Virus record (IMG/VR): IMGVR_UViG_3300028558_000016
Span: 310,001 to 374,000 of that record
DNA length: 64,000 nucleotides
Reading direction: 5' to 3' (one strand)
In this document: positions 5,516 to 64,000 of the stretch, one piece after another
Numbering within the stretch: position 1 is the stretch's first letter
Layout of the letters: the number at the start of each line of letters is the position of its first letter
Made by a program: the position numbers and the translations under genes
Notes under the pieces: generated by a model
Database searches by the model: none
The model's input: only the letters and a program-made list of their open reading frames with translations
What the model was told of the DNA's origin: nothing

Positions 5516-5917
5516 ATGAGAGTATTAGTAATGGGACCACCTGAAAAAGAGTCCATCAAAAAAGTAAAAGAATTCGCAGAGAGCCATGTTTTAAACTTCG
5601 ATGATCTGCTTGATATTAAAAATGGCGCTGAACCTTTTGTTGGAAACAGAAAAGGACATTCTTGTATCATCCCGCAAGATTTCAGAATTGTGTTTTCTGT
5701 TGAAATGCATCCAAGAAAAGATGGAAAAGGATTCACAAAATTAAGAGTGATGTCGATGTCAGTTCCTGCTGAGGGAAAACTTCCGAGTGTTGAAGCCGTT
5801 CAAATGGTTTTACCTGAGCTTGGATTCACTTCAAAATTTGAAGACTCTTATGTTACAATGGAGAATGATGCAAAAGGAGAACCTGTTGCCATAGTAGTAA
5901 TGGAAGAATTCAAATAG
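5516..5917 (+). CDS. Hypothetical protein (TAG stop)
   Basis: ORF in operon context. Confidence 0.6.
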   Translation: MRVLVMGPPEKESIKKVKEFAESHVLNFDDLLDIKNGAEPFVGNRKGHSCIIPQDFRIVFSVEMHPRKDGKGFTKLRVMSMSVPAEGKLPSVEAVQMVLPELGFTSKFEDSYVTMENDAKGEPVAIVVMEEFK

Positions 5918-7361: not shown

Positions 7362-8044
7362 AAACGACAGACAAATACGTATTATTTTATACTGAGGTAT
7401 TTTCTCAGTGGCATCCTTCCAATTTTGAAGTAGGAGGTAAAAAATTCTGCACAGCAGAACAATTCATGATGTATTTCAAAGCATTAACGTTCGGTGATCA
7501 AGAGATTGCAGACAAGATATTAGCAACAAATAGTCCACGTGAACAAAAGAAACTTGGACGCGCTGTTAAAGGATTTGATGCTGTTAAATGGAATGCAATA
7601 GCCAAGGAAGTTGTATTCAAAGGAAACAGAGCTAAGTTTCAACAGAATCCAGAAATGTTCGAACAATTAATGGCAACAGGACACAAAGAACTTGTTGAAG
7701 CTTCCCCTTATGATACTATATGGGGAATAGGCTTTGATGAAAATGCTCCTGAAGCTCTTGATAAGTCAACATGGAATGGAACAAATTGGCTTGGCGAAGT
7801 ATTAACAAAGCTTAGAGATGTTCTTAGAAGAGAACAGACAATTCAAAACATAGTGAAACATGGTGAAGCTGAATTGGAAAAATTTGCCAGGGATTATCCA
7901 AATGACATAGGACGATTGTATGAAAGCTATAAAAAATTGAAAACACAATCTTGGTCTGAAGATTTTTTAAGAGGATATTTAGGAGCTATAACAGATTTAA
8001 TTATTATTAAAAAAGGACATTGGGGAGACTCATTTGTAAAATAA
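7358..8044 (+). CDS. NADAR/YbiA family protein
   Basis: FSQW, TAEQFMM, KKLGRAV, LVEASPYDTIWGIG, GTNWLG motifs. Confidence 0.92.
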   Translation: MKTTDKYVLFYTEVFSQWHPSNFEVGGKKFCTAEQFMMYFKALTFGDQEIADKILATNSPREQKKLGRAVKGFDAVKWNAIAKEVVFKGNRAKFQQNPEMFEQLMATGHKELVEASPYDTIWGIGFDENAPEALDKSTWNGTNWLGEVLTKLRDVLRREQTIQNIVKHGEAELEKFARDYPNDIGRLYESYKKLKTQSWSEDFLRGYLGAITDLIIIKKGHWGDSFVK

Positions 8045-11226: not shown

Positions 11227-12690
11227 ATGGAAAATGATAAAAAATATTGCTTGGTGATGTTTCCTTATCCGTCTGGAGATGGATTGCACATTGGACATTG
11301 CTACAACTACTTGATAGTTGATAGCTATTGTCGTTGGATGAAGAGAAAAGGAATTGAAGTGTTTCAACCATTTGGTTATGACGCTTTCGGTTTGCCTGCG
11401 GAGAATTATGCGATCAAGCATAACAGAGATCCAAAAGAAGTCACCTATGAAAACATAGAAAATTTCAGAAGGCAGATGAAGAGATTGGATACTAATTATG
11501 AAGAGAAGTTAATTACAGCTGATCCATCTTATTTCAAATGGACACAATGGTTGTTCACAAAGATGTTGGAGAAGGGAATTGCTTACAAGAAATTTCATCC
11601 AGTAAACTTTTGTCCATCTTGCGCAACAGTGATTGCCAATGAGCAGGTGAAGGAAGGAAAATGTGAGAGATGCAATTCAGTTGTTGAGATGAAAAACTTG
11701 AATCAATGGTTCTTCAGAATAACAGACTACACAGATAGGTTGATCAAGAACTTGCAATGGTTGGATTATCCCGAGAAAACCAAGAAGCAACAATTACATT
11801 GGTTGGAGAAGATGAAAGAAAACAAGATCGATTGGTGTGTGTCAAGACAGAGAAAATGGGGATGTCCAATTCCTGTTGAAGGAGAGGAAGATACTTTGGA
11901 CACATTTGTTGACAGCTCATTTTACTACTTGAGATTCTTGACGGATTCTGAAGATGAATTCTTGCCAAGAGAAAAATATAAGCAGGTTGATTTGTACGTC
12001 GGAGGAAATGAACATGCTTGCATGCATTTGATTTATGCAAGATTTGTGAACATGTTCTTGTATGACTTGGGAATTGTTGAACAAGAAGAACCGTTCAAGA
12101 AGTTGATTCATCAGGGAATGATCAAGATGAATGGAACAAAGATGTCCAAGTCTATCGGCAATGTTGTTAATCCGGATGGGTATGATCCAGATGAATTGAG
12201 ATTTTACTTGATGTTCATTGGACATTATTTTGATGGCGGAGATTGGAACGATCAAAACATTGTTGGCATAAGAAAATTCTTTGCACGATGGGATAAGCTT
12301 ACTTTTAGAGAAGCAAAGGAAGGAATTGAATCTATGGATTTGACTGAATTTGAAAACCAGATCGATGGTTATGTGAAAGCTTTCAAGTTCAATAAGGTTG
12401 TTAGTTCATTCATGGAATTTTACAACAATAATAGCAGCAGAAACTTTGACAAGGAAACCAGATTGAAGTTGAGAAGAATGTTGGAGTGTTTTGCGCCAAC
12501 AAGATTTTCTAAAGATGAAAGGCCTCCAGTTGGCATGGATGAATTAAGAAGAAAATCCAATGAGTTGTCTGAGAACGTAAACAAGATTGAAGTAATGGTT
12601 AATAAAATTTTTAAAGATGTTGAACAAAAAGAAAATATCACCGGAATATCCGAGAATACCTCACTTGATGGGGAAGTCAAATCTGTATGA
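11227..12690 (+). CDS. leuS: Minimal leucyl-tRNA synthetase (no CP1 editing domain)
   Basis: MFPYPSG-LHIGH, GYDAFGLPAEN, DWCVSRQRKWG, DTFVDSS, GGNEHA, KMSKS; only 487 aa. Confidence 0.9.
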   Translation: MENDKKYCLVMFPYPSGDGLHIGHCYNYLIVDSYCRWMKRKGIEVFQPFGYDAFGLPAENYAIKHNRDPKEVTYENIENFRRQMKRLDTNYEEKLITADPSYFKWTQWLFTKMLEKGIAYKKFHPVNFCPSCATVIANEQVKEGKCERCNSVVEMKNLNQWFFRITDYTDRLIKNLQWLDYPEKTKKQQLHWLEKMKENKIDWCVSRQRKWGCPIPVEGEEDTLDTFVDSSFYYLRFLTDSEDEFLPREKYKQVDLYVGGNEHACMHLIYARFVNMFLYDLGIVEQEEPFKKLIHQGMIKMNGTKMSKSIGNVVNPDGYDPDELRFYLMFIGHYFDGGDWNDQNIVGIRKFFARWDKLTFREAKEGIESMDLTEFENQIDGYVKAFKFNKVVSSFMEFYNNNSSRNFDKETRLKLRRMLECFAPTRFSKDERPPVGMDELRRKSNELSENVNKIEVMVNKIFKDVEQKENITGISENTSLDGEVKSV

Positions 12691-13321
12691 CGATGACATT
12701 GAGATCAATGTTGAGTTAGGGTTTGATGCCTTTGTACAAGAGAAGGTTGATGGAGCAAACTGTGGAATCAGTTGGTTCGATGGACCCATTCTCAGAAACA
12801 GAACCCATGTGTTAAGAAAGGGATTTGAAAGAGACACTCCAGCAAAGAAACAATTTGTTCCAGCTTGGAATTGGTTGCATGAAAGAGAAGATGACTTGAA
12901 GGAGATGATGAAGAAGTGGAATGGACAGATAACTGTTTATGGAGAGTGGATGCTTGCAAAACATTCTATTGGATATGAGAAGCTTCCAGATTATTTTCTT
13001 GCTTATGACATTTGGTCGTGTGAAGAAAACAAGTTTGTTTCTCCGAAGGAATGCAAGGAACTTTTGAATGGGACTGGCATAAGATGGATCGAAGCAGAAA
13101 GAATAAGCATTCAATCGTTCTCTGATTTGAAGTCAGTTCTTGATGTTCCCTCTAAGTACAGAGATGGAATTAAAGAAGGAATAGTTATCAAGAAAACTGA
13201 CGAAGACGATAAGTGGATAGAGAAGACTTTCAAGGTTGTTAGAAAAGATTTTGAAAGGGCTGATGAAAGCTGGAATAAGAAAAAGCTTGAAAAGAATAAG
13301 CTGATAAAGAGGAGTGCCTGA
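12617..13321 (+). CDS. RNA ligase (ATP-dependent nucleotidyltransferase)
   Basis: YPRIPHL, QEKVDGAN (motif I), YGEW, FLAYDI, EGIVIK. Confidence 0.85.
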   Translation: MLNKKKISPEYPRIPHLMGKSNLYDDDIEINVELGFDAFVQEKVDGANCGISWFDGPILRNRTHVLRKGFERDTPAKKQFVPAWNWLHEREDDLKEMMKKWNGQITVYGEWMLAKHSIGYEKLPDYFLAYDIWSCEENKFVSPKECKELLNGTGIRWIEAERISIQSFSDLKSVLDVPSKYRDGIKEGIVIKKTDEDDKWIEKTFKVVRKDFERADESWNKKKLEKNKLIKRSA

Positions 13322-13432: not shown

Positions 13433-13738
13433 ATGAATGATGAAGATAAAAAAATAAAGGGATCATTGTTTTTCTTGTACATCGGCAAGCTTAAAGAATT
13501 GGGTTTGATAGAAGGTGGCGCAGGAGATTTGACCATGAAAGGTTTTGACATTGCCATTGATGCCTATAACAGTGGACATAGATTGTCAGATGAGGAGATT
13601 AGTAATTTTCTCGAAGCCGCTCCTGGAATGGACGATGACGACACAATAGAGGCAGCATTTGGAATGATAGCCAAGATGCAAGAAATTGGATTTGATGGAA
13701 TGAAAGAATTGGTTGAACGAGTAAAGAAAACATTATGA
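13433..13738 (+). CDS. Hypothetical protein
   Basis: ORF. Confidence 0.6.
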   Translation: MNDEDKKIKGSLFFLYIGKLKELGLIEGGAGDLTMKGFDIAIDAYNSGHRLSDEEISNFLEAAPGMDDDDTIEAAFGMIAKMQEIGFDGMKELVERVKKTL

Positions 13739-14445
13739 AAAAGAAATTAGTGGTGTTTAGCGGTGCAGGAGTTTCTGCTGAGAGCGGAATTCCTACATTC
13801 AGAGATTCAAATGGTCTTTGGGAAAACCATAAGATGGAAGATGTTGCTACTCCAGAAGGATGGGAGAAAAACAGAGAGCTTGTTCTCAACTTCTACAATC
13901 TTATGAGAACGAAACTCAAAGCAGTTGTTCCGAATAAAGCTCACAATATAATTGCAGAGCTTGAAGAACATTTTGAAGTTACAGTCATCACACAAAACAT
14001 AGATGACTTGCATGAGAGAAGCGGCTCAAAGAAGGTCATACATCTTCATGGAGAATTAATGAAGAGCAGAAGCACATTTAATCCAAATCTAAAATACGAG
14101 TGTACTGGAAATATAAACATAGGTGACAAATGTGAGAAAGGTTCTCAATTGAGGCCTGACATAGTTTGGTTTCATGAAAATGTTTATCACCTTGACACTG
14201 CGGCTGAATTGGTAGAACAGTGCGATATTCTTCTTGTTGTTGGAACTTCATTAAATGTTTGGCCTGCAGCAGGATTGTTATATGTGACGAAACCGGAAAC
14301 TGAAATATATTGCATTGATCCAAAAACAGTTGTTGGAAGTGATATTCAAGTTACTCACATAAAGAAGAAAGCGAGTGAAGGGATGGAGAAATTTAAAAAG
14401 ATTATTCTCGAGAAAAAAGATAAGAAAGAAAATTGCTGTTTATAA
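13735..14445 (+). CDS. cobB: Sir2/CobB NAD-dependent deacylase
   Basis: GAGVSAESGIPTFR, TQNIDDLHE, HLHG, LRPDIVWF, VGTS. Confidence 0.95.
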   Translation: MKKKLVVFSGAGVSAESGIPTFRDSNGLWENHKMEDVATPEGWEKNRELVLNFYNLMRTKLKAVVPNKAHNIIAELEEHFEVTVITQNIDDLHERSGSKKVIHLHGELMKSRSTFNPNLKYECTGNINIGDKCEKGSQLRPDIVWFHENVYHLDTAAELVEQCDILLVVGTSLNVWPAAGLLYVTKPETEIYCIDPKTVVGSDIQVTHIKKKASEGMEKFKKIILEKKDKKENCCL

Positions 14446-17600: not shown

Positions 17601-18548
17601 ATGAAAGAAATAATATTACCGGTAGGACTTCCTGCAGCAGGAAAATCCACAATAGTAAATGATTACGTCAGCCAGGGGTTTGCTAAACTTTCGAGAGATG
17701 AAATTGGAGGAGGTCTTGAAGTAGACGGAAAAGTAAATACAAAACTCAAGGATTGGATCCGAATGGGCAAGGAACAAATAATAATGGATGCTACTTACAT
17801 GACTAAGGAAGTTAGGAAGCATGTTATAGACATTGCGAAGAAGAATGGATATAAAGTAACATGCGTTCACATTGCAACATCAATAGAAGATTCTCAATTT
17901 AATGCAGTTTCGAGAATGATCAACAGGCATGGAAAACTATTTCAACACGCAGACGATTATACCAAGGCAAAAGATCCTAACATGTTTCCAGTTGCTGCCT
18001 TATACAAAGCGAATAAAATAATCGAAAAGCCAACCATGTCAGAAGGATTCGACGAGGTTAAAATAGTTCCTTTCAAAAGGAAATTAAACGGCTACACAAA
18101 CAAAGCAATATTATTTGATTATGATGGAACACTAAGACAGACTAAAAATGCCGATTCATTATATCCAACAGATCCAAGCGACATTGAAATTCTTCCTGGG
18201 AGAACTGAAAAGATCAATGAATTGAAAAAAGAAGGTTACATCATACTCGGTGTTTCAAATCAAAGTGGTGTTGCTAAAGGAGTATTGACTTACGAAATGG
18301 CCGATAAGTGTTTCAAGAAAACAAATGAGCTTTTAGGTGTTGACATCGATTACAGATTTTGTTCTCACAAGGTTCCACCTATCACATGTTATTGCAGAAA
18401 ACCAGGAGTTGGATTTGGGGTTGAGTTCATCGAGAAATATAAATTGGATCCATCACAATGTATCATGGTTGGAGATATGAAATCCGATGAGACCTTCGCA
18501 AAGAGATGTGGTTTTAAATTTGTTCACGTAGATAAATTCTTTAAATGA
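17601..18548 (+). CDS. Polynucleotide kinase/3'-phosphatase (P-loop kinase + HAD IIIA)
   Basis: GLPAAGKS Walker A; FDYDGTL, SNQSG, CRKP, MVGD..SD. Confidence 0.85.
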   Translation: MKEIILPVGLPAAGKSTIVNDYVSQGFAKLSRDEIGGGLEVDGKVNTKLKDWIRMGKEQIIMDATYMTKEVRKHVIDIAKKNGYKVTCVHIATSIEDSQFNAVSRMINRHGKLFQHADDYTKAKDPNMFPVAALYKANKIIEKPTMSEGFDEVKIVPFKRKLNGYTNKAILFDYDGTLRQTKNADSLYPTDPSDIEILPGRTEKINELKKEGYIILGVSNQSGVAKGVLTYEMADKCFKKTNELLGVDIDYRFCSHKVPPITCYCRKPGVGFGVEFIEKYKLDPSQCIMVGDMKSDETFAKRCGFKFVHVDKFFK

Positions 18549-48012: not shown

Positions 48013-48020
48013 ATTTGCAG

Positions 48021-48092
48021 AACTCCAAGTGGGGATCGAACCCACGACCAAAGGTTTTAGAGACCTACGTTCTACCACTGAACTATTGGAGC
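48021..48092 (-). tRNA. Amber suppressor tRNA (anticodon CUA)
   Basis: GCTCCAA-TA-GTTC AGTGGTA GAAC-G-TAGGT CTCTAAA ACCTT-TGGTC-GTGGG TTCGATC CCCAC-TTGGAGT-T. Confidence 0.9.
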
Positions 48093-53130: not shown

Positions 53131-53580
53131 TCATAAACCTAAAGCATCACTTATTTTTTTCCTGACTTCTCTTAACGGAGTTGTTTCTCCGGCTTTAATC
53201 TTAGATGGAATTATGAAACCAGTTTCGCGCGTTTCTTCAACGCCATTCATAGTATATGATTCTCCAATAACATCCGTAAAAGTATCTTTAAACAATTCGT
53301 CTAATTGAGCAAAGTATTTTTCTTTAACGAGAAAGAAGAATTGATTCTCGTGCATCATCAAAGAATTGTAATGCCTGAGGAATATTATGTCGCTTCCCCA
53401 TTCTCCAGCTTCTTTTCTTGCTTGAACTATTCTTCCAACATACTTATCAACACCATTATTACCGGCCTGTGGACCTGTTATAAGATATTTTCCATGATCA
53501 GCATCTGTGAAGTTTCTGATCATCATTCCCTTGTCATCAACTATTTGATTTAGGAGTTTTGTTATTTCTGATTTTTTCAT
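53131..53580 (-). CDS. Hypothetical protein
   Basis: ORF. Confidence 0.6.
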   Translation of the reverse strand: MKKSEITKLLNQIVDDKGMMIRNFTDADHGKYLITGPQAGNNGVDKYVGRIVQARKEAGEWGSDIIFLRHYNSLMMHENQFFFLVKEKYFAQLDELFKDTFTDVIGESYTMNGVEETRETGFIIPSKIKAGETTPLREVRKKISDALGL

Positions 53581-54463
53581 TGTCTCGTATTTCGTTTATT
53601 GTTTTCATTTTCATTTTCCATTCATCACCTTTCCCCCATTTTTCCCAGGCAACCTTTTCTACTAATTTTCCATACTCACCTGTTGGATTTGCTATAAGCA
53701 ATGCAGAAAGCTCATTCATCGTTTTGGCCTTTATCTCTTCTTCTATTTTATGCAAATCAATATAGGCTTCTTCCATCTTTTCAACATTCTTGTCAAACCT
53801 GATGTTAAGAGTTTCCATTAATATGGCGAACAGCATCATTGAATAGATGTAACCTTTTGGAATGTTTATTCCCATACCGTCTATAAATAAGGAGAAACCT
53901 ATCATGACAAGGAACGCGAGAGCAAGTATCTTAAATGATGGATGTTTCTCTATGAAATTGTTCAATGGGGTAAAGAATAGAAACATGCAGAATATGGCGG
54001 TCAATGTTGCAGTCAATTGGATCCATCGAACATCTGACATTCCAACTGCTGTGATCGTCGAGTCGATGCTGAATATCAAATCAATTGCAGTCATCGTCAT
54101 AATCATCGACATCATTGTTTTTTTCTCAATTGGTTTGTCTGTTCCTTTTTGTTCAATGTTGTGATATAATTCCTTTACGGCTTTGAACACAAGAAAGAAA
54201 CCTCCACCAACCATTATAAGGTCATGCACGTTGTAAGATTTTCCCATGACAGAGAAAAGTTCTTCTTTCATGTTGGCGAGAAATCCAGCACATAGAATCA
54301 AGATGGTGTTCATGATCATCGAAATAACTATTCCAATTCGTCTTGCTTTCTTTTTAAACGCTGGGTCAAGCTCAGATGTTACTATTGATAGGAATATGAC
54401 GTTGTCTATCCCGAGAACTATTTGAAGGGCAGTTAACCCTATTACTGATATAATCAAATCCAT
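53537..54463 (-). CDS. terC: TerC family membrane protein
   Basis: IVLGIDNVIF, DLIFSIDS.ITAVGM, HPSFKILAL.FL..IG, IPKGYIY. Confidence 0.92.
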   Translation of the reverse strand: MDLIISVIGLTALQIVLGIDNVIFLSIVTSELDPAFKKKARRIGIVISMIMNTILILCAGFLANMKEELFSVMGKSYNVHDLIMVGGGFFLVFKAVKELYHNIEQKGTDKPIEKKTMMSMIMTMTAIDLIFSIDSTITAVGMSDVRWIQLTATLTAIFCMFLFFTPLNNFIEKHPSFKILALAFLVMIGFSLFIDGMGINIPKGYIYSMMLFAILMETLNIRFDKNVEKMEEAYIDLHKIEEEIKAKTMNELSALLIANPTGEYGKLVEKVAWEKWGKGDEWKMKMKTINEIRDNEKIRNNKTPKSNS

Positions 54464-54548: not shown

Positions 54549-55451
54549 ATGGACAACTTGTATAATAGTAATGGTTTGATTTTTTGGTCAGAAGCGGAGA
54601 TAAAACTTCGTGAGATGTTCGAGAACTATTTCGTTCAAAAACTGAAGACCAATCTCAAATCTCAGAACAGAGCATTCGACCTTTATAAGTGCGAAGCTCC
54701 ATTATTGACTCCGGTCGATTTAATAAACCCGAATTATACCGAAGAGGATGTTTGGATTCAAGCCAATTTAAGAGGTGCAATGCCGGTTGTTCGTTATGCT
54801 GAAAAGAAATCGAGCATTGACGATGACATGGAAAAATTAATGTCATTGAGCAAAGAACACATGCGTTCCGAAGAGGATAGTTATTACAAACGCATGCTTG
54901 AATTGAACGATCAAATTACAAATGGAAAATTGAATATGGACCTTGCCATTGAAATGGGTGCGGTATATACTGAGATGTATCCTAATCATTCATTAGTATT
55001 AAGGCCTGAAACCACAATGGGAAGTTATGCTTATGCAAGACATTTGCTTAATCCGCACAATGCAGTTAAGATAATGCCACCATTGGTTGTATATCAACAT
55101 GGAAAATCATTTAGAAGAGAACAGGATCAGCCCACAAAATACATGAGGCTTAAGGAATTCTATCAATTGGAATTCCAGATACTATATTCACCTTCTACCA
55201 AGAACGACTATTCTCTAACGTTGATCCCTACAGTAAAACAAATGATAGAGGATATGATTGGTCCGTGTCATGTGGAAGATTCAGACAGACTTCCAAGCTA
55301 TGCTGAATGGACAAGAGATGTCATCTGCGATAAAACAGGAATGGAAGTTTGTTCAATGTCAAAAAGAACTGACTACGAGAACATGAACGTCATTGAGGTG
55401 GCAATAGGAACCGACCGGTGCATATATAATTTCAATTTGAAGAATGGATAA
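54549..55451 (+). CDS. GlyRS-like class II aaRS catalytic core without anticodon-binding domain
   Basis: LRPETTMG, GKSFRRE..RLKEFYQLEFQ (motif 2), VIEVAIGTDR (motif 3); ends 10 aa later. Confidence 0.8.
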   Translation: MDNLYNSNGLIFWSEAEIKLREMFENYFVQKLKTNLKSQNRAFDLYKCEAPLLTPVDLINPNYTEEDVWIQANLRGAMPVVRYAEKKSSIDDDMEKLMSLSKEHMRSEEDSYYKRMLELNDQITNGKLNMDLAIEMGAVYTEMYPNHSLVLRPETTMGSYAYARHLLNPHNAVKIMPPLVVYQHGKSFRREQDQPTKYMRLKEFYQLEFQILYSPSTKNDYSLTLIPTVKQMIEDMIGPCHVEDSDRLPSYAEWTRDVICDKTGMEVCSMSKRTDYENMNVIEVAIGTDRCIYNFNLKNG

Positions 55452-55800
55452 CGAATATGGAAGCTGCATGTTTTCTATGATGTCATTGAGACATCTTGGA
55501 CAAACTTTAAAATGGGAAGCTTCTGATATTGCTTTGAAACATGTATGTCCATTTTGTAGCGGACAGGCAAAGATAAGAGCTGAACTTAGAGACTTTGGAA
55601 TTTATGGAGAATCAATACAGGCATTCTATGCCTGTGTTAAATGCGAGGAAGAGTTTACGACAACGGAAATTGATGAGATAAATATAACGCCTCTTCTTAA
55701 AAAGAAGCGTGGAACGAGAAAAGTAGTGGAAATAATAAAATCGGTATTAAAACTTAAATTAAAAAACAATGGCACAAGAAGTAACAGACAGCAATCTTGA
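55444..55800 (+). CDS. Zn-ribbon protein
   Basis: CPFC...CVKC..FTT.E. Confidence 0.6.
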   Translation: MDNEYGSCMFSMMSLRHLGQTLKWEASDIALKHVCPFCSGQAKIRAELRDFGIYGESIQAFYACVKCEEEFTTTEIDEINITPLLKKKRGTRKVVEIIKSVLKLKLKNNGTRSNRQQS

Positions 55801-56083
55801 GGAAACTCTTAAGACGGAAAAATTAGTGGTTCTCGATTTTTGGGCACCATGGTGTGGACCTTGCAGGACGATTGGTCCTGTCATAGAAGAACTACACACT
55901 GAGTATGGAGAAAATGTGGTAATTGGAAAAGTCAACGTTGATGACAATTCTGAAGCTGCCACAAAATACGGAATCAGAAGCATTCCAGCAATTTACTTCA
56001 TTAAGAATGGAGAAGTTGTTGACAAGATAATTGGCGCAGCTCCTAAAACGGAGTTTGTGGCAAGGATCGAGGCTAACAAATAA
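55769..56083 (+). CDS. trxA: Thioredoxin
   Basis: DFWAPWCGPC. Confidence 0.97.
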   Translation: MAQEVTDSNLEETLKTEKLVVLDFWAPWCGPCRTIGPVIEELHTEYGENVVIGKVNVDDNSEAATKYGIRSIPAIYFIKNGEVVDKIIGAAPKTEFVARIEANK

Positions 56084-56084
56084 T

Positions 56085-56636
56085 ATGGCGAACAATAATT
56101 TCAAAAGGCCTTACAGGCCAATTCAGAAACAAAGGGAACACAAGATCAATGAAGAGATCAGACATCCCAATGTGAGAGTTACAGGTGATGACATTGAGTC
56201 ACAGGTTGTAACCATCCAAGAGGCATTGCGCATGGCAAGGGAAGCTGGAGTTGATCTCGTTGAGATTGCTCCAAGCGCAAACCCACCTGTGTGCAAGATA
56301 ATCGAATATGGAAAACTCCTTTACGAGAAAAAGAGAAAAGACAAGGAGAATAAAAAGAACCAAGATCAGGTTGAAATAAAAGAACTTCGATTGACACCAA
56401 GCACAGACGAACATGATTTGCAATTCAAATGCAACAATGCAATGAAATGGTTAGCTGATGGAAATAAAGTGAAAGCCGTTGTAGTATTCAAAGGAAGAAT
56501 GATCAAATATAAAGAGATGGGAGAAATCCTTTTGCTTAAACTTTCTGTGATGCTCGAAGACCATGGAAAAGTTGAACAGCTACCAAAACTCGAAGGCTTC
56601 AAAATGACCATGATGGTCATTCCAAAAAAGAAGTAA
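56085..56636 (+). CDS. infC: Translation initiation factor IF-3
   Basis: INEEIR, DLVEIAP.ANPPVCKI..YGK, IKELRL.P..DEHD, GNKVK..FKGR. Confidence 0.95.
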   Translation: MANNNFKRPYRPIQKQREHKINEEIRHPNVRVTGDDIESQVVTIQEALRMAREAGVDLVEIAPSANPPVCKIIEYGKLLYEKKRKDKENKKNQDQVEIKELRLTPSTDEHDLQFKCNNAMKWLADGNKVKAVVVFKGRMIKYKEMGEILLLKLSVMLEDHGKVEQLPKLEGFKMTMMVIPKKK

Positions 56637-57207: not shown

Positions 57208-58275
57208 ATGAAAAAATCTGTAATAAAAGTTTTTTATACAGAAAAACAAGTAAACACTAACGCAAACATAGAAGCTGCATCGAAATCAAAATCACCACTC
57301 AAACCGGTTCTTTTGATGAAAGCTTTAGATGTTCTTGGATATGGAAAAAATCTGGATATTGATCCAGATTTTTTTCCATTTAAAGACGAGGACTTCCTGC
57401 TTGCGCACACTAAAAATTACGTTGAAGCATTTTTCAATGGTGTTCAACCATTGTGTCAAAGTAATTTCTTACCGTGGAGCCAAGAATTGGCAGACTCAGT
57501 TCGTTACACTAATGCGAGTTTGTATAACGCAATTAGATATGCTTACTTAAATCCTGACCAAGTTACATTAAGTCCTACATCAGGATTCCATCATGCAATG
57601 CCTCACAGAGGCGATGGATTTTGTACATTCTCAGGACAGGTTATTGCTGCAGAAAAAATGTATCAAGAGTTTGGAGTGTCTGGTGCTGTTCTTGATTTGG
57701 ATGGTCACACAGGAAATTCCATAGATGATGCTCGTGGTTTTGCTAAAACAATTGATTTAGCAATTCCGCACGAATATAATTTTGCTCAGCTTAAAGGTAG
57801 TGATAAACACTATCTCGACTCTCTTTTAGAAGCAATGGATAAAATTGAAACAGGTGTATTGGAAAATAAAATACATTATCTAATGTGGTGCCACGGTGCA
57901 GACTCTCACGAGGATGATGATTTTGGTGGACAGGTTGACACAGAATATTGGGTTAAATGTTCTGAAGCATTTTATGCTTGGGTGAATCAATTGGATGCTA
58001 AATTGATTGCAATGGGAAGAAAACCTCTTCCAGTCATTTTAAGTTTATTTGGAGGTTATCGTGATGATGATTATTATTCAGTTATTTCGTTGCACATAAA
58101 AGATTTGACAACATGTCTTAATCTTCTTTGTGGAGAAAACATAAATTATGATGTGAACGTAAAAGATAAACGTCCAACAATAAAACGTAAACCACCTGAA
58201 AAATGGTTTGATGGAATGCCGCTATCTCTTTTGAATGTTCTTTACCCAGGAAAATATGACGATATAAACACATAG
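57208..58275 (+). CDS. Histone deacetylase-family (Zn-dependent) protein
   Basis: GFHHA..GFCTF, LDLDGH.GN, GADSH.DD, GGY; TAG stop. Confidence 0.88.
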   Translation: MKKSVIKVFYTEKQVNTNANIEAASKSKSPLKPVLLMKALDVLGYGKNLDIDPDFFPFKDEDFLLAHTKNYVEAFFNGVQPLCQSNFLPWSQELADSVRYTNASLYNAIRYAYLNPDQVTLSPTSGFHHAMPHRGDGFCTFSGQVIAAEKMYQEFGVSGAVLDLDGHTGNSIDDARGFAKTIDLAIPHEYNFAQLKGSDKHYLDSLLEAMDKIETGVLENKIHYLMWCHGADSHEDDDFGGQVDTEYWVKCSEAFYAWVNQLDAKLIAMGRKPLPVILSLFGGYRDDDYYSVISLHIKDLTTCLNLLCGENINYDVNVKDKRPTIKRKPPEKWFDGMPLSLLNVLYPGKYDDINT

Positions 58276-58349
58276 GGCTTGGCCGGAATCAGGGGACTGC
58301 GGATTCTAAACCCGCTGAACCGTGGGTTCGACTCCCACCCAGGCTACCA
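58276..58349 (+). tRNA. Second CUA-anticodon tRNA with degenerate D-arm
   Basis: GGCTTGG/CCAGGCT-A-CCA acceptor, GCGGA-TTCTAAA-CCCGC arm, GTGGG-TTCGACT-CCCAC T-arm. Confidence 0.7.
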
Positions 58350-58714: not shown

Positions 58715-59026
58715 ATGTTTGATTTTCACCAAAAAGATACACACGCAACTAATTTCTCTATAGACAAAAAAGATCTATATGAGAAGGCAATGGAAATTTT
58801 TAAAAGCTATAATCCAAAAATAAAAATATGGATTGAAGATACAGCATTTGATTCTTTCGGAAGACCCTATTATGACCATTTGAGTTTACATACAGATCAA
58901 GGTCATAAAGGTAAAATTAAATGGATAGGATTCTTTTCTACCATCAATAAAAGAAAGCTCCTGGCTGGAGAAATAAAACCAAAACAAACAATCAAAGAAA
59001 AACTTAAAGTATTTTTAAACCTATGA
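58715..59026 (+). CDS. Hypothetical protein
   Basis: ORF. Confidence 0.55.
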   Translation: MFDFHQKDTHATNFSIDKKDLYEKAMEIFKSYNPKIKIWIEDTAFDSFGRPYYDHLSLHTDQGHKGKIKWIGFFSTINKRKLLAGEIKPKQTIKEKLKVFLNL

Positions 59027-59964
59027 AAACGTTAACAGAGAACAAGTCCAAAACTTTATCTAAGTTTTTGGAAACCCTAAGGGATAAAAGAGGATTTGAC
59101 GCTGAAATTTATACAGAAAGAAAAGCGTATGCAATAAATAAATTCTTTAGAGAAAATAATCTTGATTGTGCTGTCATTGGACTTTCTGGAGGTGTCGATA
59201 GTGCTGTTGCATTTTCTCTTCTCGAATTTGCTTCTCGCAGACCAGACTCACCTATCAAAAAAATTCTTGCATTAGCAATGCCAATATATGGAAATGGAAC
59301 AACGAACCAAACTGATGCTACTAATAAAGCAACGAGGTTCATAACAAATTTTCTTGGTACAAAAAGAAAAAGGTACAATGATAAAGTAGAGTTTGAAATG
59401 TTTGATCTTTCGCATGCCTACGAATCATATCAATATGGACATGAAACAGACGCATGGTCTAACGGACAATTAGCGAGCATTGTAAGAACTCCGTTTCTAT
59501 ATTATAATGCCGCATTGTTACAAACAAAAGGATATAAATCAATTGTGGTTGGAACTACAAATCGTGATGAAGGTTCTTACATTGGCTTCTTTGGAAAAGC
59601 TTCTGACGCAATGGTCGATCTTCAACCGATAGCAGATATACACAAAAGCGAAGTGTATCAGGTTGCAAAACTTTTAGAAGTTAGTGATGAAATAATAAAT
59701 GCAACTCCGGCTGGTGACGTTCACGATGGCAGAGTTGATGAAGAAATGATTGGTGCTCCATATTGGTTTCTTGAATTATTCCTTCTTCAAAAACAATACA
59801 AAGAGACTGCCAAGTTAGAAACGTTTGAAGACGGAGAAATTTATGGAAAATATTACGCATCAATAGAAAGCATTCACGAAAAAAATAAACACAAATACCA
59901 GGTAGGTTCACCAGCACATTTTATTGATGTGATGGAACGTAAAATAGAAGGAGGTTGGCAATGA
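59023..59964 (+). CDS. nadE: NH3-dependent NAD+ synthetase
   Basis: GLSGGVDSAV, VGTTNRDE..GFFGK..D, PIADIHKSEV, DEEMIG. Confidence 0.9.
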   Translation: MKTLTENKSKTLSKFLETLRDKRGFDAEIYTERKAYAINKFFRENNLDCAVIGLSGGVDSAVAFSLLEFASRRPDSPIKKILALAMPIYGNGTTNQTDATNKATRFITNFLGTKRKRYNDKVEFEMFDLSHAYESYQYGHETDAWSNGQLASIVRTPFLYYNAALLQTKGYKSIVVGTTNRDEGSYIGFFGKASDAMVDLQPIADIHKSEVYQVAKLLEVSDEIINATPAGDVHDGRVDEEMIGAPYWFLELFLLQKQYKETAKLETFEDGEIYGKYYASIESIHEKNKHKYQVGSPAHFIDVMERKIEGGWQ

Positions 59965-60731: not shown

Positions 60732-60979
60732 ATTGGAAAGTAATATTCTTCAAAGAATATAATGATTGGGTTCCATATCAAAATGAATCTGTATGTGAAT
60801 GTGTTGAAGAAGCTTGTCTTAAAAAAGTCTACAATCAATTAAATCCTGGAATTGAAGCTGACCATGATTATAAAATTGAATTTAAAGATGGTGAAATCGT
60901 TCATATTCTTTTTGGAGTAATAGTTTCTGGAAAAATTAAGTTTACTAATAAATTTGCTAATGAATTGGAAAGTAAATAG
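60728..60979 (+). CDS. Hypothetical protein (TAG stop)
   Basis: ORF. Confidence 0.5.
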   Translation: MNWKVIFFKEYNDWVPYQNESVCECVEEACLKKVYNQLNPGIEADHDYKIEFKDGEIVHILFGVIVSGKIKFTNKFANELESK

Positions 60980-62423
60980 AGATACATTTTATAAAGAACT
61001 TCTTCCAGTCCTTGGAGAAAAAGGAATTGCTGAAGCCGGTTTCTTTGAGGATGCTGCAACGAAAGACGAAGATGTCTTAAAGACCACAAAGGTTTTGTGC
61101 ACACCTCTTTCTTTTTTAAAACCTGCAACAGGACATCCTTGCATATTGCTAACGACTGGTTCTTTTTGTCCATTGCATCCAGGCCACATCAATATGATGG
61201 AAAAAGCCAAGGAGCATCTTGAAAAAAATGGATACAATGTAATTGGTGGTTTCATTTCACCTGGACACGATGAATACATATCTGCCAAGAATAAAGAAAA
61301 AGCAATTCCAATACACTATAGAATAAGAACCATAACTGAGATGATTAAAAACCACGATTGGCTTTCTGTCGATCCATGGGAAGGAATGTTCTGTAAGGTT
61401 GCTGTAAATTTCACAGATGTTTATATAAGGCTTGAGGCATACATCAGCGAACACCTAAAGAAAGACATTCCAATATTCTTTGTTAGTGGTGGTGATAATG
61501 CGAGATTTGCTTTGACCTTCATGAAGAAAGGAAATTGTGTGATAGTTAACAGACCTCCGTATGACGATAAATTCGAACATTATAAAAAAGTTTTAAAGGA
61601 TTGTCCTAACATCCATTTCGTTGAAGGTGGAATTCCTATATCTTCAACTGAATTAAGAAAGGAAGCTTTTGTTCCAGATGAAAAGAAAAACTTATTAATA
61701 AGAGTTGAAAACACTGAGAAGAGAGGAGTTCTAAGAATAATGTATAAATATTTCAATAATATAGAAAAGAAGGAACTACACAGTCAGAAAAAACACTTTT
61801 ATGGAAAGATGTCTCTTGGCGAGATGATAAGTCTTGACTCACTTCTTAAATCAGTGCACAACTTGAAAATATCAAGATCCTATGACATTTTCGGTGCAAA
61901 GAAGATGGGATTCACAAATAGACCAGGAACTCCATCATTAGAGGAACAACTGTCTGAAATAGAGAATGGGGAATACACTCTGTTCGATGATGACATCCAC
62001 AGTGGTTCAACCATGAGATTTGCTAAATCGTTAATAGAGGGAACAGGCTCTAAGGTGAAAGAAGTGACATCATTAAACATCTCACCAGATGGTTTTGAGA
62101 TTCTCGATTCAAGAGATTTTTTCATAGGAGGAAAGAACAATGGCCTTGTGATTAAAATGCCTGATGGAAAAAACGTCAGAGCTCCTTATGTTTATCCTTA
62201 TGTTTGTCCGTTTATTAGAGGCTCAATAGACAGTCCAATGCAGTTTTCAATAGATATTTGGAAGATGAACATGGATCTATTTGAAAAGACTAATCAAACA
62301 TTGGGTGACATGCCATTCCTCCAAGACCTATTCAAAAGAGCTGGATTTAGTTTGACAGATTCAATGTATGACATCTGTAAATGGCATCATGATTATTTGG
62401 TTTTGGTACTTTTCACCAAATAA
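60960..62423 (+). CDS. NMNAT-like cytidylyltransferase fused to a PRTase-like domain
   Basis: TGSFCPLHPGH, SPGHDEY, VDPWE, GGD, ISSTELR; LFDDDIHSGST. Confidence 0.8.
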   Translation: MNWKVNRDTFYKELLPVLGEKGIAEAGFFEDAATKDEDVLKTTKVLCTPLSFLKPATGHPCILLTTGSFCPLHPGHINMMEKAKEHLEKNGYNVIGGFISPGHDEYISAKNKEKAIPIHYRIRTITEMIKNHDWLSVDPWEGMFCKVAVNFTDVYIRLEAYISEHLKKDIPIFFVSGGDNARFALTFMKKGNCVIVNRPPYDDKFEHYKKVLKDCPNIHFVEGGIPISSTELRKEAFVPDEKKNLLIRVENTEKRGVLRIMYKYFNNIEKKELHSQKKHFYGKMSLGEMISLDSLLKSVHNLKISRSYDIFGAKKMGFTNRPGTPSLEEQLSEIENGEYTLFDDDIHSGSTMRFAKSLIEGTGSKVKEVTSLNISPDGFEILDSRDFFIGGKNNGLVIKMPDGKNVRAPYVYPYVCPFIRGSIDSPMQFSIDIWKMNMDLFEKTNQTLGDMPFLQDLFKRAGFSLTDSMYDICKWHHDYLVLVLFTK

Positions 62424-63928: not shown

Positions 63929-63998
63929 GGCGATGTGACCGAGTGGTAGGTACAGATCCGCAAGATCTGGTACGGGGGTTCGAATCCTTCCATTGCCT
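63929..63998 (+). tRNA. tRNA-Cys(GCA)
   Basis: GGCGATG/CATTGCC-U73; CAGAT-CCGCAAG-ATCTG. Confidence 0.88.
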
Positions 63999-64000
63999 CA

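What the first reader, a model, noticed from the sequence alone, without database searches (positions are those of the whole stretch)
54549..55451. GlyRS-like catalytic core without anticodon-binding domain: possible partner of the suppressor tRNA
Seen: a 300-aa protein with alpha2-GlyRS-type motifs (LRPET, GKSFRxE..RxxEFxQxE, VIExxxGxDR) that ends 10 residues after motif 3. Established: homodimeric GlyRS reads the anticodon through a C-terminal domain that is missing here. Inference: an anticodon-blind synthetase able to charge the U73 CUA tRNA (a natural orthogonal pair) or damaged tRNAs, or an aaRS paralogue that ligates amino acids to another acceptor.
Basis: inference. Interest (0 to 1): 0.65.

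Follow-up and report, generated by a model that had tools for sequence, protein, structure and literature searches.

The report
Anticodon-domain-less GlyRS-like enzyme of huge phages
The gene encodes a real, stripped-down relative of glycyl-tRNA synthetase from a large uncharacterised huge-phage family that sits among tRNA genes; it most likely attaches glycine to tRNA without reading the anticodon, and the proposed exclusive pairing with the amber-suppressor tRNA is not borne out.

Summary
Window 54549-55451(+) encodes a 300-aa class II synthetase core whose closest relatives are alpha2-type GlyRS. All three class II motifs and the GlyRS glycine-pocket acids are present, and the protein ends 10 residues after motif 3. 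It belongs to a large stand-alone family: 1,673 clusters at 90% identity, 387 at 50%, none of the best 150 longer than 352 aa and none fused to an anticodon-binding domain. Members occur in huge phages and in isolates such as XbC2, Phosso and CcrSC. Catalytic residues are near-invariant across 151 members, and a motif-1 homodimer is predicted.

The only recurrent neighbours are tRNA genes: 29 of 48 loci have one within 2 kb. tRNA-Gly is the most enriched identity.

The suppressor link is weak. A CUA tRNA lies directly upstream in one clade (8 loci plus Phosso) and 7-9 kb downstream in this window's subfamily. However, 20 of 23 complete phage genomes carrying the same CUA-tRNA lineage lack the gene, and in 4 of 23 gene-bearing genomes no CUA tRNA was found. 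This genome has no in-frame TAG.

Best reading: a minimal, anticodon-independent GlyRS acting on acceptor stems. It is one of a suite of miniaturised synthetases in this phage.

The parts
54549..55451 (+). GlyRS-like class II catalytic core, 300 aa, with no anticodon-binding domain
   Evidence: ORF; family scans and PDB search; AlphaFold2 model pLDDT 89.7; best Foldseek matches are GlyRS; 1,673 relatives.
54684..54713 (+). Motif 1 region (residues 46-55, KCEAPLLTP) forming the dimer interface
   Evidence: E49 and P55 are conserved. Residues 4-18 and 46-55 form the predicted homodimer interface (ipSAE 0.80, best control 0.00).
54771..54983 (+). Helical insertion of about 70 residues (residues ~75-145), specific to this subfamily and located where canonical GlyRS carries insertion domain 1
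   Evidence: Most family members (223-240 aa) lack it. It is predicted as helices with pLDDT 94-98. Its C-terminal part aligned with the segment that precedes RPET in M. tuberculosis GlyRS (third alignment).
54999..55022 (+). GlyRS signature LRPETTMG (residues 151-158); E154 corresponds to T. thermophilus GlyRS E188
   Evidence: Alignments to GlyRS chains. E154 is conserved in 145 of 151 family members.
55095..55178 (+). Motif 2 (residues 183-210), containing R189 (ATP), E191 and E208 (glycine pocket)
   Evidence: Aligned without gaps to GlyRS motif 2. R189 is conserved in 147 of 151 members, E191 in 146 and E208 in 149.
55389..55418 (+). Motif 3 (residues 281-290, VIEVAIGTDR), containing E283, A285 (Ser in canonical GlyRS) and R290
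   Evidence: N. equitans GlyRS aligns VLELSFGVDR here. E283 is conserved in 149 of 151 members and R290 in 145. Position 285 is Ala in 126 members and Ser in 18.
55444..55800 (+). 118-aa four-Cys zinc-ribbon ORF with a basic tail; its start overlaps the stop of the GlyRS-like gene (translational coupling)
   Evidence: ORF. Only weak zinc-ribbon matches in family scans. It is conserved at the same position in the long-form subfamily at 36-40% identity. No homologue follows the gene in XbC2 or Phosso, and none was seen among the downstream ORFs of the other clades.
55769..56083 (+). Thioredoxin, next gene of the conserved operon
   Evidence: Pfam PF00085, E 8e-31. The order is the same in relatives.
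56085..56636 (+). Translation initiation factor IF3. The frame is open from 56031; the likely ATG start is at 56085.
   Evidence: Pfam IF3_N and IF3_C. The order is the same in relatives.
57208..58275 (+). Histone-deacetylase-family protein, the last conserved gene of the block
   Evidence: Pfam PF00850, E 5.5e-16. Conserved in relatives.
53537..54463 (-). TerC-family membrane protein, divergent upstream neighbour
   Evidence: Pfam PF03741, E 2e-36. Also upstream in relative loci L262 and L263.
48020..48092 (-). CUA (amber-suppressor-type) tRNA with U73, G1.U72, C2-G71 and U3-A70; 6.4 kb upstream on the opposite strand
   Evidence: ARAGORN; Rfam tRNA 67.7 bits. It is 80% identical to the CUA tRNA at genome 374278.
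58276..58349 (+). tRNA-like element that ARAGORN calls tRNA(CUA); it has a poor D arm and an encoded ACCA end
   Evidence: ARAGORN. No Rfam tRNA match; only a 20.5-bit tmRNA-like T-arm/acceptor match.
63929..63999 (+). tRNA-Cys(GCA), first member of a conserved tRNA-Cys/tRNA-CUA pair. The CUA partner lies at genome 374278-374351, 278 bases beyond the window end.
   Evidence: ARAGORN. The same pair lies 7-9 kb downstream of the gene in relatives L260, L261 and L262.

Best explanation
The ORF is a functional, homodimeric, minimal glycyl-tRNA-synthetase-like enzyme. It descends from alpha2-type GlyRS and has lost the C-terminal anticodon-binding domain; most family members have also lost the insertion domains.

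Proposed mechanism:
- Shown: the ATP and glycine-pocket residues are retained.
- Inferred: the enzyme forms glycyl-adenylate.
- Inferred: it transfers glycine to the 3' end of tRNA, recognising only the acceptor end through the motif 2 loop, and so does not read the anticodon.
- Inferred: its main substrates are the phage's and/or the host's tRNA-Gly, which carry the canonical G1-C72, C2-G71, G3-C70, U73 set.

It is one member of a suite of phage-encoded, often miniaturised synthetases that keep phage tRNAs charged during infection. A tRNA with a Gly-like acceptor end but another anticodon, such as the U73 CUA tRNA at 48020-48092, could be a side substrate. Suppressor charging is not the family's general role.
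For: Fold and origin:
- GlyRS is the best match by HMM, by PDB sequence search and by fold.
- The N-terminal NGLIFWSEAEI segment resembles, from my memory of GlyRS sequences, the conserved GlyRS N-terminal motif.

Active site:
- By spacing in the profile alignment, E154, R189, E208 and E283 correspond to T. thermophilus GlyRS E188, R220, E239 and E359. These are the acidic glycine pit and the motif 2 arginine; the residue numbers are from my recollection of Arnez et al. 1999.
- These residues are conserved in 145-149 of 151 diverse members.
- The position equivalent to S361 is Ala in 126 members and Ser in 18.
- The motif 2 and motif 3 arginines are conserved.

Dimer: a homodimer through motif 1 is predicted, score 0.80 against a best control of 0.00. 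That mark was reached by 20 of 30 proteins solved as pairs of one chain and by 1 of 23 solved as single chains. The runs agree in at least 97% of contacts and the pLDDT is at least 86.

Family: 1,673 clusters at 90% identity and 387 at 50%. The best 150 are all 352 aa or shorter, with no fusion.

Context:
- 29 of 48 non-redundant loci have a tRNA gene within 2 kb. About 14% of this genome lies that close to a tRNA.
- No other neighbour is conserved across clades.
- tRNA-Gly is the commonest tRNA within 10 kb (30 of 276), and all 30 lie within 5 kb.
- tRNA-Gly lies within 5 kb in 12 of the 24 tRNA-bearing loci outside the CUA-adjacent clade. The mean for an amino-acid type is 4.6 loci.
- In L004, L056, L044 and L043 the gene sits directly beside tRNA-Gly genes. 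In L043 the order is tRNA-Gly x3, tRNA-Ile, tRNA-Ala x2, GlyRS-like, mini-AlaRS-like.
- In this genome the nine other synthetase(-like) genes found each lie within about 2.5 kb of a cognate tRNA gene. Several are also truncated.
Against: - In this genome the two tRNA-Gly genes (genome 6195-6480) are about 124 kb from the gene. The GlyRS-like gene would therefore be the one exception to the rule that a synthetase sits next to its cognate tRNA.
- A 225-300-aa core lacks the parts of canonical GlyRS that hold the tRNA, and no charging activity has been measured.
- The Ser-to-Ala change in the pocket could alter amino-acid choice.
- The enrichment of tRNA-Gly rests on about 9 partly related lineages and was not tested on a phylogeny.
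- One clade (L010, L011, L014, L015, L024) has the gene next to Leu/Ser/Phe/Tyr tRNAs with no tRNA-Gly nearby.
- Several phages (CcrSC and about 15 loci) have no tRNA within 6-10 kb.
Confidence: 0.42

Rival explanations
1. One reading: the enzyme is the dedicated partner of the phage CUA (amber suppressor) tRNA. It would charge that tRNA without reading the anticodon, forming a natural orthogonal pair that inserts glycine at UAG.
For: - In 8 metagenomic loci and in Sinorhizobium phage Phosso, the only tRNA within 10 kb is a CUA tRNA 50-1,900 nt upstream on the same strand.
- These tRNAs show full compensatory covariation, so they are functional.
- In this window's subfamily a tRNA-Cys/tRNA-CUA pair is conserved 7-9 kb downstream.
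- In this genome the nearest sound tRNAs on both sides of the gene are a CUA tRNA upstream and the tRNA-Cys/tRNA-CUA pair downstream.
- 17 of 23 large gene-bearing records have at least one CUA tRNA.
- The U73 CUA tRNA shares G1, C2-G71 and U73 with tRNA-Gly.
Against: - The 8 adjacent cases form one clade (support 100) with Phosso beside it, and every flanking gene is syntenic too, so this is one or two events.
- The same CUA-tRNA lineage occurs in at least 119 viral stretches. Of 23 complete records carrying it, 20 lack the gene.
- XacN1 has two CUA tRNAs according to its paper (PMC5852040) and is not among the 20 phage records that match the protein.
- In 4 gene-bearing records no CUA tRNA was found.
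- The adjacent CUA tRNAs have G73 and variable first base pairs, not the Gly set.
- The genome has no in-frame TAG, and TAG accounts for 5% of stops.
- TAG-to-Gln via GlnRS is the reassignment reported for phages (bioRxiv 10.1101/2021.08.26.457843). This phage encodes its own Glu/Gln-type synthetase next to tRNA-Gln.
Confidence: 0.12
2. The enzyme is a tRNA-independent adenylate-forming enzyme. It would activate glycine or another small amino acid for transfer to a non-tRNA acceptor (a protein, carrier or metabolite), or it would make dinucleotide polyphosphates such as Ap4A. This would resemble other anticodon-domain-less aaRS paralogues (aa:carrier-protein ligases, HisZ, AsnA, EpmA).
For: - The tRNA-holding domains are absent, and such truncated paralogues are precedented (review PMC9437257).
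- About 15 loci and CcrSC have no tRNA nearby.
- NAD-salvage or Nudix genes lie within about 5 kb in XbC2, CcrSC, this window and relatives.
- From my own knowledge, human GlyRS makes Ap4A.
Against: - No carrier protein or other non-tRNA neighbour is conserved across clades.
- tRNA genes are the only recurrent neighbours.
- The motif 2 loop, which in class II enzymes contacts the acceptor end, is highly conserved in the closer relatives, and its core residues remain so across 151 members.
- The gene sits with other synthetases and tRNA-repair genes.
Confidence: 0.2
3. The enzyme is the catalytic subunit of a two-part synthetase. The core would need a separate RNA-binding partner, as bacterial GlyQ needs GlyS. 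In this subfamily the partner would be the translationally coupled zinc-ribbon protein at 55444-55800; elsewhere it would be another phage or host protein.
For: - The start of the zinc-ribbon ORF overlaps the stop of the gene.
- The ORF has two CxxC pairs and a basic tail.
- It is conserved in that position in long-form relatives at 36-40% identity.
- Small overlapping downstream ORFs are also present in XbC2 and Phosso.
Against: - The downstream ORFs of other clades are not homologous to it or to each other.
- No anticodon-binding-type domain is encoded apart from the one in ProRS.
Confidence: 0.15

Closest known systems
alpha2-type (dimeric) glycyl-tRNA synthetase, class IIa (TIGR00389 / PRK04173; PDB 1ati, 5z5e, 8slg, 2pme)
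   Same: - Class II fold with motifs 1-3.
- The GlyRS-specific RPET..G signature, motif 2 of the same length, the HYA..T.D segment and the E-x-(S/A)-x-G-x-D-R motif 3.
- All three acidic glycine-pocket residues.
- A predicted motif-1 homodimer.
   Different: - No C-terminal HGTP anticodon-binding domain.
- No insertion domains in most members; this subfamily has one 70-residue helical insertion.
- Length of 225-300 aa against about 450-690 aa.
- The pocket Ser is Ala in 83% of members.
- Scores far below the curated family cut-offs (45.7 against 312 bits).
GlyQ, the alpha subunit of bacterial alpha2beta2 GlyRS
   Same: Both are catalytic-core-only polypeptides of about 300 aa for glycine activation that themselves lack a tRNA anticodon-binding module.
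   Different: - It is a different sequence family: no Pfam GlyQ match appeared.
- GlyQ works with the large GlyS subunit, and no conserved partner was found here.
Pyrrolysyl-tRNA synthetase without the N-terminal domain, paired with tRNA-Pyl (natural anticodon-blind amber pair)
   Same: - A small class II core (about 270 aa) that ignores the anticodon.
- ARAGORN labels the CUA tRNAs 'tRNA-Pyl'.
- PylRS chains appear among the Foldseek matches.
   Different: - The sequence signatures are those of GlyRS, not PylRS/PheRS.
- The CUA tRNAs are ordinary cloverleaves with normal D and T loops (Rfam tRNA 67.7 bits), not tRNA-Pyl.
- The co-occurrence test failed.
Truncated aaRS paralogues with non-tRNA acceptors (amino acid:carrier-protein ligases, HisZ, AsnA, EpmA/PoxA)
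   Same: They are class II cores that lost the anticodon-binding domain. aa:CP ligases activate glycine or alanine.
   Different: - Those derive from SerRS, HisRS, AspRS or LysRS, not GlyRS.
- They sit next to their acceptor or pathway genes, whereas this family sits next to tRNA genes.
Designed and natural minimal synthetases ('urzymes', AlaRS and HisRS minihelix-charging fragments)
   Same: Both are catalytic cores that act on the acceptor stem alone. The same phages carry mini-AlaRS-like, mini-HisRS-like and mini-TrpRS-like genes.
   Different: Those are mostly laboratory constructs or fragments. This is a natural, widespread family under purifying selection.

Membership tests
Class II aminoacyl-tRNA synthetase catalytic core | Antiparallel beta-sheet fold with motifs 1, 2 and 3, including the motif 2 and motif 3 arginines | tested here: met
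   - AlphaFold2 model, pLDDT 89.7.
- At least 500 class II aaRS chains match by Foldseek at probability 1.0.
- R189 is conserved in 147 of 151 members and R290 in 145; P55 is conserved in 121 of 151.
Class II aminoacyl-tRNA synthetase catalytic core | Homodimer through motif 1 | tested here: met
   Prediction only. Score 0.80 against a best control of 0.00, with the interface at residues 4-18 and 46-55. The mark was reached by 20 of 30 proteins solved as pairs of one chain and 1 of 23 solved as single chains.
alpha2-type glycyl-tRNA synthetase | Glycine pocket of three acidic residues plus Ser (T. thermophilus E188, E239, E359, S361) and the RPETAQG signature | tested here: met
   E154, E208 and E283 are near-invariant. 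The Ser position is Ala in 126 members and Ser in 18. The signature reads RPETTMG. The residue numbers of the reference enzyme come from my memory and were checked only by spacing.
alpha2-type glycyl-tRNA synthetase | C-terminal HGTP anticodon-binding domain that reads C35/C36 | tested here: not met
   The protein ends 10 residues after motif 3. It has no PF03129 match. None of the best 150 representatives exceeds 352 aa.
alpha2-type glycyl-tRNA synthetase | Score above the curated family thresholds | tested here: not met
   PRK04173 scores 45.7 bits against a cut-off of 312. TIGR00389 scores 32 bits against 243.
alpha2-type glycyl-tRNA synthetase | Glycylation of tRNA-Gly | not testable with these tools
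   This needs ATP-PPi exchange and aminoacylation assays.
Natural orthogonal suppressor pair (synthetase plus CUA tRNA) | Co-occurrence of the enzyme and the CUA tRNA across genomes | tested here: not met
   - Given the gene, a CUA tRNA was found in 17 of 23 records.
- Given the CUA lineage, the gene is present in 5 of 49 records and in 3 of 23 complete ones.
- No base rate is available for huge phages that lack the gene.
Natural orthogonal suppressor pair (synthetase plus CUA tRNA) | In-frame TAG codons that require suppression | tested here: not met
   ORFs of at least 100 codons under the standard code cover 91% of the genome. Only 5 TAGs have long open frames on both sides, and all 5 are ordinary gene ends.
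PylRS / tRNA-Pyl | tRNA-Pyl architecture (3-nt variable loop, small D loop, no G18G19/T-psi-C) and a PylRS-type pocket | tested here: not met
   The CUA tRNAs have normal GG and TTCGA loops and a 5-nt variable loop. The protein's sequence signatures are those of GlyRS.
Amino acid:carrier-protein ligases | SerRS-like core with an adjacent carrier-protein gene | tested here: not met
   The best matches are GlyRS, then HisRS and ProRS, not SerRS. No conserved neighbour other than tRNA genes was found.

The most novel reading that the evidence does not exclude
Huge phages carry a natural set of miniaturised synthetase cores: GlyRS-like here, with AlaRS-like, HisRS-like and TrpRS-like genes in the same genome. 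These would charge tRNAs from the acceptor stem alone, with no anticodon reading. In effect this would be a living 'operational RNA code'. In the Phosso-like clade and in this window's clade, the GlyRS-like member would also charge the neighbouring CUA tRNA, giving a natural anticodon-blind amber-suppressor pair.
Probability: 0.15. Interest if true: 0.85.

Novelty: new variant of a known kind. Interest (0 to 1): 0.55.

Why it matters
If the core charges tRNA alone, it would be the smallest natural GlyRS known. It would also be a natural counterpart of the designed 'urzymes' used to argue how synthetases began.

Because it would ignore the anticodon, it would be a ready-made scaffold for genetic-code engineering.

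For phage biology, it would show that huge phages bring a parallel, pared-down charging system placed beside their own tRNA genes. That bears on how they keep translation running when the host shuts it down or when the phage represses host synthetases. One huge phage has a CRISPR spacer against host GlyRS (PMC7162821).

The family is large, present in culturable phages of Caulobacter, Xanthomonas, Sinorhizobium and Brevundimonas, and mostly annotated as hypothetical, so it can be tested directly.

Tried and rejected
- **Conserved downstream partner.** The small ORFs that overlap the gene's end in XbC2, Phosso and the window are not homologous. A survey of all loci found no common downstream gene. 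Only the long-form subfamily keeps the zinc-ribbon ORF.
- **Conserved neighbours in general.** Clustering of 2,666 flanking ORFs gave only clade-specific synteny.
- **TAG recoding.** Rejected for this genome. I named no alternative code in any tool.
- **Control set of huge phages lacking the gene.** A search with this phage's large terminase found only 9 close relatives, mostly on short contigs. I therefore could not measure the base rate of CUA tRNAs in gene-negative huge phages. The reverse test was used instead.
- **First classification of 'no CUA' genomes.** The classification from the covariance model alone was wrong for G001, G013, G015, G020 and XbC2. It was corrected by a pattern scan plus ARAGORN and by the XbC2 annotation. 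The remaining negatives (G003, G004, G005, G016) were not scanned exhaustively.
- **Origin of the CUA tRNAs.** They are not derived from any isoacceptor of this genome: the best non-CUA match is 69-75% identical.
- **Literature.** Four searches and six papers gave no description of this family.
Full report
**What is there**

The window is bases 310001-374000 of a 482,156-bp viral record with 37% G+C. Positions 54549-55451(+) hold a 300-codon ORF.

Sequence and structure searches agree on what it is:
- Pfam sees a sub-threshold class II core: tRNA-synt_2b, E 6.2e-5, residues 146-245.
- NCBIfam ranks glycine--tRNA ligase models first (PRK04173 E 4.2e-12; TIGR00389 E 4.9e-8), ahead of HisRS and ProRS. 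All are far below the curated cut-offs.
- phmmer against PDB returns only GlyRS chains at E below 1e-3.
- An AlphaFold2 model built on 30 relatives has mean pLDDT 89.7.
- The best Foldseek matches are alpha2 GlyRS from N. equitans, human, M. tuberculosis and T. thermophilus, followed by PheRS-alpha, ProRS and PylRS.

**The active site is that of GlyRS and is under selection**

The profile-to-PDB alignments align the family with GlyRS from the RPET signature through motif 2 and on to the HYA..T.D segment. Motif 3 aligns as VLELSFGVDR (GlyRS) against VLEVAIGTDR.

I used the T. thermophilus residue numbers as I recall them from Arnez et al. 1999: E188, R220, E239, E359 and S361. The spacing fits exactly with E154, R189, E208, E283 and A285 of the window protein.

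In an alignment of 151 diverse members (loci plus 50%-identity representatives):
- The four charged residues are conserved in 145-149 sequences.
- The motif 3 arginine is conserved in 145.
- The Ser position is Ala in 126 sequences and Ser in 18.

A homodimer through the N-terminal segment and motif 1 is predicted. The score is 0.80 against a best control of 0.00. The mark was reached by 20 of 30 proteins solved as pairs of one chain and by 1 of 23 solved as single chains. The runs agree in at least 97% of contacts, and pLDDT is at least 86. This may partly reflect the model's memory of class II dimers. It shows likeness to them, not binding.

**The family**

- The word-index search found 1,673 clusters. 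Most are 223-240 aa, and about 27 share the 70-residue helical insertion seen here.
- The exhaustive profile search of 1.84 billion representatives found 387 at E up to 1e-3. The best 150 are all 352 aa or shorter, and none is fused to another domain.
- The loss of the anticodon-binding domain is therefore a property of the whole family, not a truncation in this genome.
- No free-standing HGTP_anticodon protein is encoded here. The only match is inside a ProRS.
- Members occur on contigs of 277-561 kb.
- They also occur in isolates: Xanthomonas phage XbC2, Sinorhizobium phage Phosso, Caulobacter Bertelyvirus phages and Brevundimonas phages. There they are annotated variously as 'RNA synthetase class II', 'serine-tRNA synthetase', 'aminoacyl-tRNA synthetase' or hypothetical.
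- I found no paper that describes the family.

**Context**

Across 48 non-redundant loci, the only recurrent neighbours are tRNA genes. 29 loci have a tRNA within 2 kb, whereas about 14% of this genome lies that close to a tRNA. Clustering of flanking ORFs gave no other neighbour shared between clades.

tRNA-Gly stands out:
- It accounts for 30 of the 276 tRNAs within 10 kb, and all 30 are within 5 kb.
- It lies within 5 kb in 12 of the 24 tRNA-bearing loci outside the CUA clade. The mean for an amino-acid type is 4.6 loci.
- These phage tRNA-Gly genes carry the bacterial identity set: U73 in 28 of 30 and a GCG acceptor start in 21 of 30.
- In L043 the order is tRNA-Gly x3, tRNA-Ile, tRNA-Ala x2, GlyRS-like, then a 240-aa AlaRS-like gene.

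This enrichment is suggestive only. The lineages are partly related, and I did not test it on a tree.

**The suppressor hypothesis: evidence for**

- In 8 loci and in Phosso, the only tRNA within 10 kb is a CUA tRNA 50-1,900 nt upstream on the same strand.
- These tRNAs are sound. 99.6% of cells pair, and 16 of 21 pairs show changes on both sides.
- Relatives of the window protein keep the block TerC / GlyRS-like / zinc-ribbon ORF / thioredoxin / IF3 / deacetylase-like. A tRNA-Cys/tRNA-CUA pair follows 7-9 kb downstream, as in this genome.
- 17 of 23 large gene-bearing records hold at least one CUA tRNA.

**The suppressor hypothesis: evidence against**

- The 8 adjacent loci form one clade (support 100) with Phosso next to it, and all their flanking genes are syntenic. 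The adjacency is one or two events.
- The adjacent CUA tRNAs have G73 and variable first pairs, unlike tRNA-Gly.
- A scan for the same tRNA lineage found at least 119 viral stretches. Only 5 of the 49 records searched have the gene, and 4 of those were already known. Only 3 of the 23 complete records have it.
- In four gene-bearing records no CUA tRNA was found. That scan was not exhaustive.
- This genome reads well under the standard code, and none of its TAGs is in-frame.
- XacN1, which also carries CUA tRNAs, likewise showed no read-through targets (PMC5852040).
- Phage TAG reassignment is reported as Gln through GlnRS. This phage has its own Glu/Gln-type synthetase beside tRNA-Gln.
- I could not obtain a base rate of CUA tRNAs in gene-negative huge phages.

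**A wider pattern in this genome**

Scanning ORFs near the tRNA arrays showed that the nine other synthetase(-like) genes found each lie beside cognate tRNA genes:

| Gene | Length | Genome position | Cognate tRNA nearby |
|---|---|---|---|
| AlaRS-like | 263 aa | 124929-125720 | tRNA-Ala |
| Asp/Asn/Lys-type | 421 aa | 126571-127836 | tRNA-Asp |
| Class I Leu/Met-type | 487 aa | window 11227-12690 | Leu/Ser array |
| TyrRS | 406 aa | 387449-388669 | tRNA-Tyr |
| Glu/Gln-type, with a GatB/YqeY-like gene | 519 aa | 388782-390341 | tRNA-Gln |
| ProRS | 385 aa | 393695-394852 | tRNA-Pro |
| HisRS-like | 258 aa | 414409-415185 | tRNA-His |
| TrpRS-like | 243 aa | 415182-415913 | tRNA-Trp |
| ArgRS-like | 401 aa | 418300-419505 | tRNA-Arg |

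Several of these are much shorter than their cellular counterparts. Domain loss is thus a general habit of this phage's synthetases, not a special adaptation of the GlyRS-like gene.

By the same rule, however, the GlyRS-like gene is the odd one out. The tRNA-Gly genes are about 124 kb away, and its nearest sound tRNAs are a CUA tRNA 6.4 kb upstream on the opposite strand and the tRNA-Cys/tRNA-CUA pair 8.5-8.8 kb downstream.

**Verdict**

The object is real. It is a new, minimal variant of GlyRS and a member of a large uncharacterised phage family.

| Reading | Confidence |
|---|---|
| Dimeric glycine-activating enzyme that charges tRNA from the acceptor end without reading the anticodon, mainly tRNA-Gly | about 0.4 |
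| tRNA-independent ligase | about 0.2 |
| Core that needs a partner such as the coupled zinc-ribbon protein | about 0.15 |
| Dedicated partner of the suppressor tRNA | about 0.12 |

None of these can be settled without enzyme assays.

Noticed in passing
Genome G000 outside the window (L255:5929-6717, L255:7571-8833, L256:13449-16338, L003:613-1767, L258:5409-6910, L258:9300-10502) and window 11227-12690: The nine other aminoacyl-tRNA-synthetase(-like) genes found in this phage each lie within about 2.5 kb of cognate tRNA genes. Several are strongly shortened: AlaRS-like 263 aa, HisRS-like 258 aa, TrpRS-like 243 aa, ArgRS-like 401 aa and a class I Leu/Met-type of 487 aa. A similar 240-aa AlaRS-like gene follows the GlyRS-like gene in L043.
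   Followed up: partly
L025:10001-10700: This copy of the GlyRS-like gene has in-frame TGA codons exactly at two positions that are invariant Gly in the close-relative alignment A1 (equivalents of G9 and G238). That suggests a phage whose host reads TGA as glycine (code 25 type). I did not translate it under another code.
   Followed up: no
window 58276-58349 (+): ARAGORN calls this element tRNA(CUA). It has a defective D arm, a good T arm, a 7-bp acceptor stem and an encoded ACCA end, and it starts one base after the stop of the deacetylase-like gene. Rfam does not see a tRNA, only a weak tmRNA-like 3' part. It may be a degenerate tRNA or a tRNA-like 3' element.
   Followed up: partly
window 48020-48092 (-); genome 374278-374351; L108:1241-1559: Several phages encode two or three CUA tRNAs with different discriminators (G73, A73, U73). 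The U73 type of this genome and that of a distant phage (G001) share an identical acceptor top (G1.U72, C2-G71, U3-A70, C4-G69, U73) although the rest of the tRNA differs. This looks like a conserved identity set for an unknown synthetase.
   Followed up: partly
window 63929-63999 plus genome 374278-374351; L260:13145-13297; L262:10935-11225: A tandem tRNA-Cys(GCA)/tRNA(CUA) pair is conserved among relatives of this phage. In the Phosso-like clade a CysRS gene lies just upstream of the CUA tRNA. In L026 a CysRS gene overlaps the end of the GlyRS-like gene.
   Followed up: no
L094:1466-1541 (record G009): ARAGORN calls a tRNA here with a four-base anticodon (UCUA). It could be a quadruplet-decoding or frameshift-suppressor-like tRNA in a 289-kb phage that also has the GlyRS-like gene.
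   Followed up: no
window 12617-13321, 13735-14445, 17601-18548; L254:1066-2484: Two RNA ligases, a polynucleotide kinase/phosphatase and a Sir2-family protein lie inside or beside the tRNA arrays. This is a tRNA-repair kit next to the tRNA genes.
   Followed up: no
window 59023-59964 and 60954-62423; L001:1-1453; L264:1879-4481: NAD-salvage genes lie within about 5 kb of the GlyRS-like gene in three distant phages: this one (NAD synthase and a cytidylyltransferase-like gene), XbC2 (NadR, PnuC) and CcrSC (NadM-type adenylyltransferase, nicotinamide phosphoribosyltransferase). This may be chance, or a shared island of auxiliary genes.
   Followed up: no
L016:10001-10700; L058:10001-10720: Two contigs carry frameshifted copies of the gene. 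These could be sequencing errors, pseudogenes or interrupted genes.
   Followed up: no
Genome G000: tRNA genes at 5778-5869, 7373-7464, 124757-124843, 387507-387591, 413915-413998, 414375-414464: Several tRNA genes whose amino-acid types normally give tRNAs of about 75 nt are 84-92 nt long, with an extra arm or insert drawn by ARAGORN (for example tRNA-Trp at 84 nt and tRNA-Gln at 85 nt). This could reflect introns or unusual variable arms.
   Followed up: no
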